Positions 2 through 64,000 of a stretch of 64,000 nucleotides of DNA are shown piece after piece. The translations under genes and the position numbers were made by a program. The notes beneath the pieces are model-generated. The model did not search any database. It was not told the DNA's origin and worked only from the letters and a program-made list of their open reading frames with translations. Each line of letters opens with the position of its first letter. The first letter of the stretch is position 1. Where the stretch lies: IMG/VR virus record IMGVR_UViG_3300043570_001980, positions 62,001 to 126,000 of that record, one strand, 5' to 3'.

Positions 2-391
2 TTTGCTGGCACTGAGTTTGCTATTATTCCTATTGCAGTGGCCAAAGCTCTAGTTGATGCAGGCAAGGTAAAACCCATTGGATTTACAGGCACACGTCGG
101 ATGGCACAATTTCCTGATGTCCCATTGTTAAACACAGTAGCGCCTGGTATCAATGTGTATGCGGCCTGGTCAATACAATTGCCGCCTGGCACAGACAAGG
201 ACATTGTTGCATGGTATCAACAGCAATTCAGCAAGGCTATTCGTTCAGCAGAATACAAAGAGTACACGGATGCCAATGTTATTTTCTATGCTGAAGATGA
301 GTTGACTCCTGTCGGGCTTCGAAAGCAAATGGACGAATTACGTGCGGCATTTATTCCTGTGTTGAGTCGAATTGATTTAAGTAAAGAATGA
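2..391 (+). CDS. Tripartite tricarboxylate transporter substrate-binding protein (Bug/TctC family), C-terminal part; 5' end lies outside the window
   Basis: Frame is open from base 2. GKVKPIGFTGTRRMAQFPDVP and the closing helix match the Bug/TctC C-terminal pattern. Confidence 0.75.
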   Translation, partial: FAGTEFAIIPIAVAKALVDAGKVKPIGFTGTRRMAQFPDVPLLNTVAPGINVYAAWSIQLPPGTDKDIVAWYQQQFSKAIRSAEYKEYTDANVIFYAEDELTPVGLRKQMDELRAAFIPVLSRIDLSKE

Positions 392-56311: not shown

Positions 56312-56857
56312 ATGATCACAATGAAAGAATGGATGGAACTAGTTGACTATAAAATCACCGAAGGTGGTGATTTTGGCTGGGACTGTTACGGATCAAATAG
56401 TTACCAGCTAAGTAGCTGGAACGGTGTTCACGACCAGGGTGGGTGGAGTTTCAATATTGTATTCAGTACCAAGAGTCAAAAGGTCTACGAAGTAGCAGTC
56501 TGCGACTACACCAACAATCGTGCATATCGCATGATCAATCCCGACTATGTTAAAAAGTACAACAAAGAAGCCAAGACTCGCGGCGAAATGCTGAACCAAG
56601 CCTGGGACGATGTTGACTATGTGGATCTAGAAGTGGACGACGACTTTATCCAAAAATGTCTTGCTATCAAAGCCGGAGAAGTGTATGATACCCGTGTGAG
56701 TGTGCCTATTGATCTGTCAGATGATGGCATGTTTACACTGATGAAAATGGCACACGAACGCGACATTACATTTAATCAAATGGTCGAACAAGTCCTACGA
56801 GAACAATTGGGTCTGCTGGGTATGGATTCAGTTGTTGACAACAAAAACAAATTCTAA
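56312..56857 (+). CDS. Hypothetical protein with a C-terminal ribbon-helix-helix-like segment
   Basis: aggag SD; C-terminal LMKMAHERDITFNQMVEQVL. Confidence 0.6.
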   Translation: MITMKEWMELVDYKITEGGDFGWDCYGSNSYQLSSWNGVHDQGGWSFNIVFSTKSQKVYEVAVCDYTNNRAYRMINPDYVKKYNKEAKTRGEMLNQAWDDVDYVDLEVDDDFIQKCLAIKAGEVYDTRVSVPIDLSDDGMFTLMKMAHERDITFNQMVEQVLREQLGLLGMDSVVDNKNKF

Positions 56858-56863
56858 TATAAT
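56835..56863 (+). promoter_or_regulatory. Sigma70 consensus promoter for the tRNA cluster
   Basis: TTGACA-17 nt-TATAAT, 11 nt before the first tRNA. Confidence 0.85.
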
Positions 56864-56873
56864 TACGTTTATA

Positions 56874-56951
56874 GGGCCGTTAGCTCATGTTGGTTAGAGC
56901 AGTGGACTCATAATCCATTGGTGCTGTGTTCGACTCACAGACGGCCCACCA
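56874..56951 (+). tRNA. tRNA with CAT anticodon, most like tRNA-Ile2 (lysidine)
   Basis: Cloverleaf GGGCCGT/ACGGCCC, loop CTCATAA, TTCGA, encoded CCA. Resembles ileX rather than Met tRNAs. Confidence 0.85.
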
Positions 56952-56958
56952 GACAATT

Positions 56959-57045
56959 GCGACTGTGGTGAAATAGGTAGACACAAGAGACTTAAAATCT
57001 CTCGCTCGCAAGGGCATGCCGGTTCGATTCCGGCCAGTCGCACCA
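56959..57045 (+). tRNA. tRNA-Leu(TAA)
   Basis: GCGACTG/CAGTCGC acceptor, AGAGA-CTTAAAA-TCTCT, long variable arm, CCA. Confidence 0.93.
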
Positions 57046-57050
57046 ACAAC

Positions 57051-57125
57051 CTGGCCTTAGTTCAATGGACAGAACAGTAGCCTTCTAAGCTATCAATACA
57101 GGTTCGATTCCTGTAGGCCGGACCA
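57051..57125 (+). tRNA. tRNA-Arg(TCT)
   Basis: CTGGCCT/AGGCCGG, GTAGC-CTTCTAA-GCTAT, TTCGA, CCA. Confidence 0.92.
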
Positions 57126-63238: not shown

Positions 63239-63269
63239 AAGACCCGCCAACTAGGCGGGTTTTCTTTTT
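63239..63269 (+). terminator. Rho-independent terminator with an overlapping antiterminator option
   Basis: AAGACCCGCC-AACTA-GGCGGGTTTT-CTTTTT; the 5' arm also pairs with GCGGGTCTT at 63196. Confidence 0.8.
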
Positions 63270-63367
63270 GTAGGTAGACCAGAATTGACAGATCTAGTAC
63301 AATAGAAACATGAAGGAAGCAATTCCGGGCAACAACAGAGTGTTGTAAAAATACAACAAACAAGTAG

Positions 63368-63434
63368 TTGACAAAAATTGCAAAGTATCATATAATTGAT
63401 GCATACGTTGAGAAATCAACAATGTTCTTTAACA
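63368..63434 (+). promoter_or_regulatory. Sigma70 consensus promoter followed by a boxB-like hairpin and rrn-type boxA
   Basis: TTGACA-17 nt-TATAAT; GTTGA-GAAA-TCAAC; TGTTCTTTAACA at 63423. Confidence 0.75.
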
Positions 63435-63487
63435 ATGTTAGAGTTTTTGTATAGTAGCCCGCAAGGGTTGCTATATTAAAATGTATT

Positions 63488-63668
63488 AAAGGTTACCTAC
63501 ACCGTTAGGGATCTACAGCGAGGACAGTGGGGCCGCCCACGCTCAAACTAGGTCTATGAAACCGGGCAGAAATGTCCAGAAAAGCGGCGGAGCATGTAGG
63601 CAGTAATGACCGTGCAGGCCTATACAAGACGGTTGTATAGGTAGACATAGATGCACAATGGTTCCTTT
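63488..63668 (+). ncRNA. Candidate multi-helix structured RNA upstream of tRNAs
   Basis: CCTACA/TGTAGG, GTGGG/CCCAC, GGGCA-GAAA-TGTCC, GTGCA/TGCAC, CCTATACAA/TTGTATAGG, AAAGG/CCTTT. Confidence 0.55.
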
Positions 63669-63693
63669 AGTATTTTTTAATATAGTAAATTTT

Positions 63694-63783
63694 GGAGCGG
63701 TGGCCGAACGGTAAGGCAGCGGATTGCTAATCCGTACAACGTGTTAAAGCGTTGACTGGGTTCGACTCCCAGTCGCTCCGCCA
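63694..63783 (+). tRNA. tRNA-Ser(GCT)
   Basis: GGAGCGG/TCGCTCC, loop TTGCTAA, long variable arm, GCCA end. Confidence 0.93.
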
Positions 63784-63862: not shown

Positions 63863-63937
63863 GCTCGATTCGTCTATCGGTTAGGACATGCGGTTTTCAT
63901 CCGCATAAGAGCGGTTCGACTCCGCTATCGAGTACCA
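63863..63937 (+). tRNA. tRNA-Glu(TTC)
   Basis: GCTCGAT/ATCGAGT, TGCGG-TTTTCAT-CCGCA, TTCGA, CCA. Confidence 0.93.
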
Positions 63938-63942
63938 GACAT

Positions 63943-64000
63943 GGAGATGTGGCCGAGTGGCTGAAGGCGGCAGACTGTAAATCTGTTCTGTAAAAAGCGC
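63943..64000 (+). tRNA. tRNA-Tyr(GTA), truncated by the window end
   Basis: GGAGATGTGGCCGAGTGG D-arm; GCAGA-CTGTAAA-TCTGT. Confidence 0.85.

What the first reader, a model, noticed from the sequence alone, without database searches (positions are those of the whole stretch)
63368..63475. rRNA-operon-style antitermination leader (promoter-boxB-boxA) on a phage tRNA operon
Seen: TTGACA-17-TATAAT, GTTGA-GAAA-TCAAC hairpin, TGTTCTTTAACA, then an 11-bp GCAA-capped hairpin (63450-63475). Known: rrn leaders have boxB then boxA (E. coli TGCTCTTTAACA), which recruit NusB/NusE/NusA/NusG/SuhB for Rho-resistant transcription and RNA folding. Inference: the phage hijacks the host rrn antitermination complex for its untranslated RNA array.
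Basis: partly seen in the sequence, partly recalled or inferred. Interest (0 to 1): 0.65.

Follow-up and report, generated by a model that had tools for sequence, protein, structure and literature searches.

The report
rRNA-style boxA leader on phage tRNAs
A giant lake-water phage starts its transfer-RNA gene array with a near-perfect copy of the signal that bacteria put in front of their ribosomal RNA genes to make RNA polymerase fast and termination-proof. The same cassette heads tRNA arrays in over a hundred other uncultured phage contigs, so it is very probably a real, previously undescribed way for lytic phages to borrow the host's rRNA transcription machinery.

Summary
There is a 12/12 sigma-70 promoter (63368-63396), a GAAA-capped 5-bp hairpin (63407-63420), TGTTCTTTAACAA (63423-63435) and an 11-bp GCAA hairpin (63450-63475). 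The boxA word matches the published functional consensus GYTCTTTAANA exactly. It occurs once in the 128.8-kb record and once in a 342-kb sibling genome.

Relatives keep it, with a change only at the consensus's free position. A collection scan found the promoter-boxA module in 61 viral stretches, against 3 for a reversed-boxA control. Of 58 promoter-hairpin-boxA matches, 57 precede tRNA genes, against 1 of 45 other matches. The hairpin stem covaries.

TGTTCTTTAACAA and TGTTCTTTAAAAA are real leader and spacer boxA words flanking 16S genes in Pseudomonadota. The near-complete phage genomes encode no NusB, NusG, S10 or recognisable RNA polymerase.

I therefore support the reading that host Nus factors are recruited to the phage's noncoding RNA operon. 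There are three caveats:
- Binding and read-through are untested.
- The "boxB" hairpin also heads leaders without boxA, so it is a separable module.
- The operon shows no strong Rho-loading tract. An RNA-chaperone role, closing long leader-trailer-like helices around unknown structured RNAs, may matter as much as antitermination.

I rate it a new variant of a known kind.

The parts
63239..63263 (+). Intrinsic terminator that closes the upstream protein-coding unit, so the leader promoter starts a new transcription unit
   Evidence: 10-bp stem with 6 GC pairs followed by a T-run
63341..63358 (+). Inverted repeat TGTTGTA-AAAA-TACAACA, 10 nt upstream of the -35 hexamer. It could be an upstream promoter element or a regulator site
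   Evidence: Folds at -5.8 kcal/mol, z -3.2. It recurs after tRNA-Met before the next promoter. An 'ACAACA' word lies 7-10 nt upstream of the -35 in many family promoters
63368..63396 (+). Consensus sigma-70 promoter TTGACA-17-TATAAT. The predicted transcription start is near A63403
   Evidence: 12 of 12 match. It is one of 26 such promoters, all on the + strand, against 0.93 expected from shuffles. The start site is inferred from spacing and has not been mapped
63407..63420 (+). boxB-like hairpin GUUGA-GAAA-UCAAC, starting about 4 nt from the predicted 5' end
   Evidence: -4.7 kcal/mol. Across 51 distinct leaders the stem is 98% paired, with 33 cells changed on both sides against 10.5 in shuffles, 0 of 500 shuffles reaching that. 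The word UGAGAAA is shared with the rrn boxB of Pantoea and E. coli
63423..63435 (+). boxA, TGTTCTTTAACAA
   Evidence: Perfect match to GYTCTTTAANA and 12 of 13 to E. coli rrnG TGCTCTTTAACAA. Unique in the genome. Conserved in relatives. The same word flanks 16S genes in Pseudomonadota
63427..63443 (+). Possible weak hairpin pairing the boxA 3' half CUUUAAC with GUUAGAG. The TAGAG word after boxA is shared with other phage leaders and with some bacterial rrn leaders
   Evidence: Present in the minimum-energy fold of 63403-63449. The relative G001 changes C63433 to A together with G63437 to T, which keeps the pair. TTTGTAGAGT in phage leaders resembles TTCATAGAGT in bacterial ones
63450..63475 (+). 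GCAA-capped 11-bp hairpin that branches from the 5' strand of a long-range helix
   Evidence: -17.1 kcal/mol, z -5.5. In G001 two wobble pairs become Watson-Crick pairs. Analogous hairpins flanked by ATATAG...CTATAT occur in other lineages
63470..63492 (+). 5' strand of a long-range helix of about 23 bp, comparable to an rRNA leader-trailer helix
   Evidence: Folds. Duplex energy -32.5 kcal/mol against -19.3 +/- 4.5 for shuffles. Equivalent flanking duplexes occur in 7 lineages
63486..63679 (+). Conserved structured RNA of unknown family, enclosed by the long-range helix
   Evidence: Whole-leader fold z -4.4. Homologues in L007, L013, L164, L121 and L174. 7 pairs show compensatory change. No Rfam match at E up to 10
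63655..63677 (+). 3' strand of the long-range helix
63694..63783 (+). tRNA-Ser (GCT), the first tRNA of the array
   Evidence: ARAGORN and Rfam
63863..63937 (+). tRNA-Glu (TTC)
63943..64000 (+). tRNA-Tyr (GTA), cut by the window end. The array continues beyond the window

Best explanation
This is a phage copy of the bacterial rrn leader, placed at the head of a noncoding RNA operon.

Proposed sequence of events. Host sigma-70 RNA polymerase starts near 63403. The nascent RNA forms a short GAAA hairpin and then exposes boxA (63423-63435). Host NusB-NusE(S10) bind boxA. Together with NusA, NusG and SuhB they convert the polymerase into an rrn-type antitermination complex: fast, processive and resistant to Rho.

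Because boxA stays tethered at the RNA exit, the complex would also hold the adjacent 5' strand of a long-range helix in place until its 3' partner is made. That would help close leader-trailer-like stems around embedded structured RNAs. RNase processing would then release those RNAs and the tRNAs.

Shown: the sequence elements, their conservation and covariation, their tight association with phage tRNA arrays, their identity with genuine rrn boxA words, and the absence of phage-encoded Nus factors.

Inferred: Nus binding, antitermination, the chaperone effect, and the identity of the host (probably a freshwater proteobacterium).
For: - Anatomy as described.
- boxA is a perfect match to GYTCTTTAANA, the consensus derived from functional E. 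coli boxA sites (PMC5725501).
- The order and spacing resemble the E. coli rrnG P2 leader fetched here.
- boxA occurs once in the record and once in the 342-kb sibling.
- The relatives G001 and G002 keep the promoter, hairpin and boxA, changing only the free N position. G003 carries three such leaders in its tRNA region.
- The promoter+boxA pattern gave 61 viral stretches against 3 for reversed boxA. 26 of the 61 have downstream tRNA arrays, and none has a 16S 5' motif within 3 kb.
- 57 of 58 promoter+hairpin+boxA matches precede a tRNA, against 1 of 45 other matches, p 7e-27.
- The hairpin stem covaries.
- TGTTCTTTAACAA and TGTTCTTTAAAAA lie on either side of 16S genes in Pseudomonadota genomes.
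- Different phage lineages resemble different rrn leaders beyond boxA. G003 has AATTTGTCAGAC where E. coli has AATTTATCAGAC. L014 has TCTGGGCACTCG where E. coli boxC reads TCTGTGTGGGCACTCG. The TAGAGT word is shared with unnamed proteobacteria.
- No NusB, NusG, S10 or RNA polymerase Pfam hits in three near-complete genomes. The record has 26 consensus host-type promoters.
- The short 3-tRNA cluster at 56874 has a 12/12 promoter but no leader or boxA.
- Long-range helices enclose structured RNAs right after boxA. This matches the boxA-anchored model of leader-trailer helix formation (PMC10250234).
Against: - There is no experimental datum. The transcription start, Nus binding and read-through are all inferred.
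- The operon has no 78-nt window with C/G of 1.5 or more and low G, so a strong Rho-loading site is not evident.
- The boxA 3' half can pair with GUUAGAG in a weak hairpin that might mask it.
- The hairpin is a weak fold by itself (z -1.6) and also heads leaders that lack boxA. Only 14 of 63 hairpin leaders in an unbiased scan carry boxA.
- No recognisable boxC (UCUGUGUGGG) is present in this phage.
- An intrinsic terminator and a small-ORF cassette interrupt the array after the fifth tRNA. The leader may therefore serve only about 1.3 kb.
- The viral contigs are related to one another, so the counts are not independent events.
- The host is unknown, so a direct comparison with the host's own rrn leader was not possible.
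Confidence: 0.7

Rival explanations
1. The system is lambda-like rather than rrn-like. A phage-encoded RNA-binding protein, analogous to N, recognises the conserved UGAGAAAUCA hairpin and works with boxA and the Nus factors. Antitermination would then be phage-controlled, and the hairpin would be the key element.
For: - The loop and closing pairs UGA-GAAA-UCR are invariant while the outer stem covaries.
- A GNRA-type loop is what lambda N reads (established knowledge).
- The hairpin occurs at many other early leaders of these phages without boxA, as a phage-specific signal would.
Against: - The order is hairpin then boxA, the reverse of lambda nut sites.
- Several lineages have boxA 6-19 nt after the -10 hexamer with no hairpin at all.
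- boxA alone suffices for rrn complex formation (PMC10250234).
- The same UGAGAAA word is in bacterial rrn boxB, where no N protein exists.
- No candidate protein was identified, though none was searched for systematically.
Confidence: 0.1
2. The cassette is a captured rrn-type strong promoter. The selected features are the promoter and a 5' stabilising hairpin, which give high output and RNA stability. boxA came along by descent and is functionally neutral or nearly so.
For: - The hairpin begins about 4 nt from the predicted 5' end, as 5' stabiliser hairpins do.
- The hairpin is used independently of boxA.
- No rut-like tract is present.
- boxA mutations in E. coli rrn reduce function only 2-3 fold (PMC10250234).
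Against: - boxA is invariant at every consensus position across leaders whose spacers, stems, flanks and downstream genes have all diverged.
- It occurs in multiple copies per array.
- It also occurs without the hairpin.
- It was 20-fold enriched over a reversed control.
Confidence: 0.08
3. boxA acts negatively or as a sensor. As at suhB and hisG, Nus factor binding would promote Rho termination or otherwise throttle the operon, coupling phage tRNA synthesis to the host's free Nus pool. Alternatively, abundant leader RNA titrates NusB/NusE away from host rrn operons and contributes to host shut-off.
For: - boxA-dependent repression is documented (PMC5725501; PMC12360218).
- A separate phage family has boxA 8-10 nt before a ribosome-binding site, like suhB.
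- The leader is made from a 12/12 promoter.
Against: - The suhB mechanism works through translation, and this operon has none directly downstream.
- The context of a noncoding, structured, tRNA-containing transcript is that of rrn operons, where boxA is positive.
- A decoy role needs a stable free leader, whereas the metatranscriptome contigs laid here did not cover the leader (weak evidence).
Confidence: 0.07

Closest known systems
Bacterial rrn operon leader (boxB-boxA-boxC) and the rrn transcription antitermination complex (NusA, NusB, NusE, NusG, SuhB, S4)
   Same: - A strong sigma-70 promoter, then a hairpin, then boxA within about 20-30 nt of the start.
- The boxA word is identical to leader and spacer boxA of some Pseudomonadota, and 12 of 13 to E. 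coli.
- The operon is untranslated and contains tRNAs.
- boxA is followed closely by the 5' strand of a long helix that encloses a structured RNA (PMC10250234).
   Different: - It sits on a lytic jumbo phage genome.
- No rRNA is present. The enclosed RNAs are small (about 160-370 nt) and of unknown family.
- There is no recognisable boxC word in this phage.
- The hairpin loop is sequence-conserved and is also used without boxA.
- Function is untested.
Lambdoid phage nut sites (boxA-boxB plus N protein)
   Same: A phage uses an RNA boxA to engage the host's NusB-NusE, and a neighbouring small hairpin has a GNRA-like purine loop.
   Different: - The element order is reversed.
- boxA here is the full rrn-type word, not the weaker lambda CGCTCTTA.
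- No N homologue is known here.
- It controls noncoding RNA genes rather than the delayed-early mRNAs of a temperate phage.
boxA in mRNA leaders (suhB and others; Baniulyte et al. 2017, PMC5725501)
   Same: It shares the consensus GYTCTTTAANA, lies outside rRNA operons, and shows that Nus factors have non-ribosomal targets.
   Different: Those sites lie next to a start codon and repress through translation and Rho. That survey explicitly did not consider noncoding RNAs or phages.
Phage T4 tRNA operon with stable RNAs C and D (from general knowledge, not tested here)
   Same: A phage tRNA cluster is co-transcribed with small stable RNAs of unknown function and processed by host RNases.
   Different: To my knowledge no boxA leader is described for T4.

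Membership tests
rrn-type boxA (NusB-NusE binding site) | Sequence fits the functional consensus GYTCTTTAANA | tested here: met
   GTTCTTTAACA at 63424-63434. The consensus comes from PMC5725501. It is 12 of 13 to E. coli rrnG TGCTCTTTAACAA.
rrn-type boxA (NusB-NusE binding site) | Lies on the sense strand in the transcribed 5' leader, shortly after a promoter | tested here: met
   It starts 26 nt after the -10 hexamer of a 12/12 promoter. In E. coli rrnG P2 it starts 38 nt after the -10. The transcription start is predicted, not mapped.
rrn-type boxA (NusB-NusE binding site) | Conserved in relatives while the flanks diverge | tested here: met
   All consensus positions are invariant in 51 distinct leaders, and only Y and N vary. 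Those leaders were collected with a pattern that fixed most of boxA. Independent support comes from the close relatives and from the 20-fold enrichment over a reversed control.
rrn-type boxA (NusB-NusE binding site) | The same word is used in rrn leaders and 16S-23S spacers of plausible hosts | tested here: met
   Both TGTTCTTTAACAA and TGTTCTTTAAAAA flank Rfam-confirmed 16S genes in unnamed Pseudomonadota genomes. The actual host is unknown.
rrn-type boxA (NusB-NusE binding site) | Binds NusB-NusE and recruits SuhB, NusA and NusG | not testable with these tools
   This needs a gel-shift assay, ChIP or in vitro transcription.
rrn-type boxA (NusB-NusE binding site) | Confers read-through of Rho-dependent terminators | not testable with these tools
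   Only a composition scan was possible, and it found no strong rut-like tract in the operon.
rrn leader architecture (boxB-boxA-boxC) | A hairpin (boxB) lies upstream of boxA | tested here: met
   The 5-bp GAAA hairpin at 63407-63420 covaries. However, the same hairpin occurs without boxA in 49 of 63 leaders, and boxA occurs without a hairpin.
rrn leader architecture (boxB-boxA-boxC) | boxC (UCUGUGUGGG) lies 18-19 nt after boxA, inside the 5' strand of a leader-trailer helix | tested here: inconclusive
   No boxC word is present. A long-range helix 5' strand does begin 3-40 nt after boxA. A boxC-like word is present in another phage lineage, L014.
Lambda-type nut site | boxA lies upstream of boxB | tested here: not met
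   Here the hairpin precedes boxA.
Lambda-type nut site | A phage N-family protein binds the boxB loop | not tested
   No systematic search for arginine-rich small proteins was made.
Intrinsic terminator or attenuator | A GC-rich hairpin is followed directly by a U-run | tested here: not met
   Neither leader hairpin is called by the terminator scan. The GCAA hairpin is followed by AUUAAAAUG.

The most novel reading that the evidence does not exclude
Phage tRNA arrays of a large, mostly freshwater clade are built as miniature rrn operons. A boxA-tethered host antitermination complex would act chiefly as a co-transcriptional RNA chaperone, closing leader-trailer helices around a new family (or families) of phage-encoded structured RNAs. 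The sequence-conserved UGAGAAAUCA hairpin would be a separate signal, read by an as yet unknown phage or host factor at many early promoters. If the T5-like pre-early leaders work the same way, N-independent capture of the Nus machinery would be a general strategy of virulent phages.
Probability: 0.3. Interest if true: 0.8.

Novelty: new variant of a known kind. Interest (0 to 1): 0.64.

Why it matters
- boxA and the Nus factors are textbook for rRNA operons and for lambda's N system. Apart from suhB-type autoregulation, little else is known to use them.
- A conserved rrn-type boxA at the head of phage tRNA and small-RNA operons would add a third natural use. It would show that virulent, including jumbo, phages borrow the host's rRNA transcription machinery without any N protein.
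- It would offer an answer to how long untranslated phage RNA arrays escape Rho and fold correctly.
- It gives compact natural substrates (boxA plus a 160-nt stem-enclosed RNA) for testing the proposed RNA-chaperone function of the antitermination complex.
- It provides a search handle for finding new phage noncoding RNAs.
- I found no paper linking boxA with phage tRNA arrays in the held library.

Tried and rejected
- Cultured relatives. Megablast and blastn of the region against cultured phages matched only the tRNAs. Two other leader-bearing contigs gave no cultured relatives either.
- Rfam. Three runs, down to E 10, found nothing in the leader or in the inter-tRNA RNAs.
- Hairpin+boxA in 185,579 bacterial genomes. 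The scan gave about the chance number of hits, except for Pantoea and Erwinia rrn leaders. It therefore did not identify the host.
- Covariance model R1. It is too short to score at whole-genome scale.
- Host naming. The phylum-wide pattern search returns no taxon names, so the bacteria whose rrn leaders most resemble the phage leader could not be named.
- Five cultured tRNA-rich phages (Munch, fENko-Kae01, Xoo-sp13, TrudiGerster, PG07). boxA words occur at chance level and none lies at their tRNA arrays. The only structured hits are the T5-like pre-early leaders.
- Metatranscriptome contigs. They touch the RNA-gene part but cannot show starts, ends or co-transcription.
- rut-like composition. 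A scan for C-rich, G-poor tracts found nothing.
- Rejected readings. Bacterial rrn fragments misfiled as viral were ruled out: no 16S motif lies downstream, and the contigs of 342-364 kb carry phage genes and terminal repeats. The GCAA hairpin is not a terminator.

Full report
WHAT IS THERE

The window is bases 62692-126691 of a 128.8-kb IMG/VR virus record. Sibling contigs with identical or 94%-identical neighbouring genes are 342-345 kb long and 95-99% complete. The element therefore belongs to a jumbo phage. Public runs that hold the sequence are lake-water metagenomes. The genome has 41% GC. It encodes a family-B DNA polymerase, ClpB-like and GroEL-like chaperones and a radical-SAM protein. 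It has no close cultured relative.

- TTGACA-17-TATAAT at 63368-63396, scoring 12 of 12.
- GTTGA-GAAA-TCAAC at 63407-63420.
- TGTTCTTTAACA(A) at 63423-63435.
- An 11-bp GCAA-capped hairpin at 63450-63475, at -17.1 kcal/mol and z -5.5.

An intrinsic terminator at 63239-63263 closes the preceding unit. tRNA-Ser starts at 63694, followed by Glu and Tyr. In the sibling contig the array runs to 22 tRNAs over 4.9 kb, and this is its only 12/12 promoter.

IS IT MORE THAN CHANCE?

The record has 26 TTGAC-16..18-TAnAAT sites on the + strand and none on the - strand, against 0.93 expected from shuffles. Host-type sigma-70 promoters are clearly in use. Three near-complete genomes of the group have no Pfam-recognisable RNA polymerase.

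The boxA 12-mer is unique in the record and in the 342-kb sibling.

The first hairpin is thermodynamically weak (-4.7 kcal/mol, z -1.6). It needs comparative support, which it has (see below).

COMPARISON WITH THE REAL THING

I fetched an E. coli rrnG leader. It reads TTGACT-17-TATTAT, then GCCGCTGAGAAAAAGCGAAGCGGC, then CAC-TGCTCTTTAACAATTTATCAGACAATCTGTGTGGGCACTCG, followed by 16S. The phage element has the same order (promoter, hairpin, boxA) and similar spacing. Its boxA differs at one position.

Baniulyte et al. derived the consensus GYTCTTTAANA from functional E. coli sites and mutants (PMC5725501). The phage word fits it exactly.

A pattern search of 401 Pseudomonadota genomes found TGTTCTTTAACAA and TGTTCTTTAAAAA in multiple copies spaced about 2.1 kb apart. 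In four fetched examples, Rfam shows the copies lie on either side of 16S or 23S genes. The phage variant is therefore a genuine rrn boxA of some proteobacteria. One genome uses both the C and the A variant in the same operon.

CONSERVATION

The two relatives at 94% protein identity, G001 and G002, have moved the array 2.5 kb away from the neighbouring gene. They keep the promoter, hairpin and boxA. boxA changes only at the consensus's free position, C to A. A matching G to T change four bases on preserves a small hairpin. In the GCAA hairpin, two wobble pairs become Watson-Crick pairs.

A more distant 364-kb phage with terminal repeats, G003, has three promoter-hairpin-boxA leaders within its tRNA region. 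One of them continues AATTTGTCAGAC, almost the E. coli AATTTATCAGAC.

SURVEY OF VIRAL CONTIGS

The pattern TTGAC-18-TAnAAT-5..35-TGYTCTTTAACA hit 61 viral stretches. The same pattern with boxA reversed hit 3. Of the 61, 26 have a same-strand tRNA gene, usually an array, downstream. None has a 16S 5' motif within 3 kb.

Its hits split cleanly. Of 58 matches with a stem of at least 5 bp and an upstream promoter, 57 have a tRNA within 800 nt. Of 45 other matches, 1 does (Fisher p 7e-27).

In 51 distinct leaders the outer stem pairs vary as AU/GC/GU and UA/CG/GC. There are 33 cells changed on both sides, against 10.5 in shuffles, with 0 of 500 shuffles reaching that.

Several arrays carry two or three such leaders. 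Some leaders have boxA only 6-7 nt after the -10 hexamer, with no hairpin. These contigs are related to one another, so the counts are not independent events. However, tRNA order, spacing and flanks have diverged widely.

THE HAIRPIN IS A SEPARATE MODULE

An unbiased scan for promoter plus UGAGAAAUCR, with no boxA required, found 63 leaders with a good stem. Only 14 of them carry boxA. The others fall into different conserved leader families, some before tRNAs and some before genes.

The loop and closing pairs are sequence-conserved. They resemble the rrn boxB of Pantoea (TTGAGAAATCG) and E. coli (CTGAGAAAAAG). The name "boxB" fits by position and resemblance, but the hairpin's role is open. 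It could be a 5' stabiliser, a factor binding site or a folding aid. In rrn operons boxA alone suffices (PMC10250234).

WHAT FOLLOWS boxA

The 217 nt before tRNA-Ser are not spacer. Bases 63470-63492 pair with 63655-63677, giving about 23 bp with one mismatch. The duplex energy is -32.5 kcal/mol against -19.3 +/- 4.5 for shuffles, and the whole fold has z -4.4. The GCAA hairpin branches from the 5' strand of this helix.

The enclosed RNA of about 160 nt has homologues in at least five other lineages. The conserved blocks are GGUUACC..CCGUUAGG, AUGAAAC, AGAAGCGRCGG and GUAAUGA. Seven pairs show compensatory change. There is no Rfam match.

Equivalent flanking helices occur in seven lineages. 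A second tract of 446 nt between tRNA-Tyr and tRNA-Asp, beyond the window end, folds at z -5.45 with a 25-bp enclosing helix.

This is the architecture of rRNA precursors. There, boxC lies in the 5' strand of a leader-trailer helix. According to the structural model discussed by Warner et al., boxA-NusB tethering holds that strand at the RNA exit until the trailer appears (PMC10250234).

MECHANISM AND ITS LIMITS

The phage genomes encode no NusB, NusG or S10. Any boxA function must therefore use host factors.

The best-supported reading is recruitment of the host rrn-type antitermination complex to a noncoding phage operon. The expected gains are processivity, speed and co-transcriptional folding.

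Points against:
- There are no experimental data.
- No C-rich, G-poor tract that would mark a strong Rho entry site was found.
- A weak alternative pairing of boxA with GUUAGAG is possible.
- No boxC word is present.
- A small-ORF cassette with an intrinsic terminator follows the fifth tRNA, so the unit served may be only about 1.3 kb.

Within the same phage, the short three-tRNA cluster at 56874 has an equally perfect promoter but no leader. That fits the idea that the leader is needed for the long, complex unit.

Freshwater metatranscriptome contigs match the RNA-gene part and not the adjacent coding part. They cannot show starts or co-transcription.

NOVELTY

Full-text searches found no paper connecting boxA with phage tRNA arrays. 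The 2017 survey excluded noncoding RNAs.

The element is an rrn-type boxA in a new setting, so I rate it a new variant of a known kind.

In passing, I found that T5-like phages of E. coli and Vibrio carry a promoter-hairpin-GCTCTTTAA(A/C)AATTTGGATA leader in front of the pre-early A2/A1/dmp operon. This hints that N-independent use of boxA by virulent phages is wider than tRNA arrays, and it offers a cultured system for testing.

Noticed in passing
window 63486-63679 (flanking helix 63470-63492 with 63655-63677): A conserved structured RNA of unknown family sits between the leader and the first tRNA, enclosed by a long-range helix of about 23 bp. Homologues occur in at least five other phage lineages, with compensatory pair changes. 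There is no Rfam match even at E 10.
   Followed up: partly
L002 1721-2166 (just beyond the window end, between tRNA-Tyr and tRNA-Asp): A second unassigned 446-nt tract folds far better than shuffles (z -5.45), with a 25-bp enclosing helix and inner stem-enclosed domains. It has no Rfam family.
   Followed up: partly
L247 about 1000-1130 (Escherichia phage TrudiGerster MZ501108, ~106.5 kb) and L236/L248 (Vibrio phage vB_VpS_PG07 MH645904, ~106.3 kb): T5-like phages of two host genera share a promoter-hairpin-GCTCTTTAA(A/C)AATTTGGATA leader upstream of the pre-early A2/A1/dNMP-phosphatase operon. This is a possible boxA on protein-coding pre-early genes. No paper linking boxA with T5 pre-early genes turned up in the held library.
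   Followed up: partly
L026 598-950 and about 25 similar contigs (e.g. L011, L016, L018, L020, L034): A different phage family has a consensus promoter, a hairpin (GTCAGCT-AGAAAAG-TTGAC) and boxA 8-10 nt before a ribosome-binding site. The small gene that follows (MNT.NRVWI..., phrog_12905) is of unknown function. The layout resembles suhB-type boxA regulation.
   Followed up: partly
L253, L261, L268, L271, L281 and others: The same promoter plus GUUGAGAAAUCAAC hairpin is followed, without boxA, by a conserved ~60-nt motif (CUGCGGU..GGUAGGUUCAGGA..GCGGCGAUAGGAAC) and then tRNAs or genes. This is another unassigned leader RNA family.
   Followed up: no
window 63341-63358; L002 2349-2366: The inverted repeat TGTTGTA-N4-TACAACA lies upstream of two promoters in the array, centred about 11 bp further upstream (relative to the predicted start) at the second promoter than at the first. 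An ACAACA word sits 7-10 nt upstream of the -35 in many related promoters. It could be a regulator site or an UP-like element.
   Followed up: partly
window 63297-63309 and L002 2409-2421: The 13-mer GTACAATAGAAAC occurs twice, each time just before a tiny ORF (12 aa and 43 aa) inside the RNA-gene region. The second ORF is followed by an intrinsic terminator at L002 2584-2617 that interrupts the tRNA array.
   Followed up: no
window 56835-57125: A separate three-tRNA cluster (Met, Leu, Arg) starts about 11 nt after a 12/12 promoter, with no leader, hairpin or boxA.
   Followed up: yes
L014 4937-5040 (also L041, L050): Another phage lineage has boxA TGCTCTTTAACA followed 23 nt later by TCTGGGCACTCGG, close to the enterobacterial boxC region TCTGTGTGGGCACTCG, ahead of tRNAs 600-700 nt downstream.
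   Followed up: no
L077 (G003:C1 ~232.2-232.3 kb, minus strand): The sequence right after the first G003 leader looks tRNA-like (GTCTTATCGTCTAGGGGCTTAGGAC ... GGTTCGAATCCATC) but carries a long insert, and ARAGORN does not call it. It may be an interrupted or unusual tRNA.
   Followed up: no
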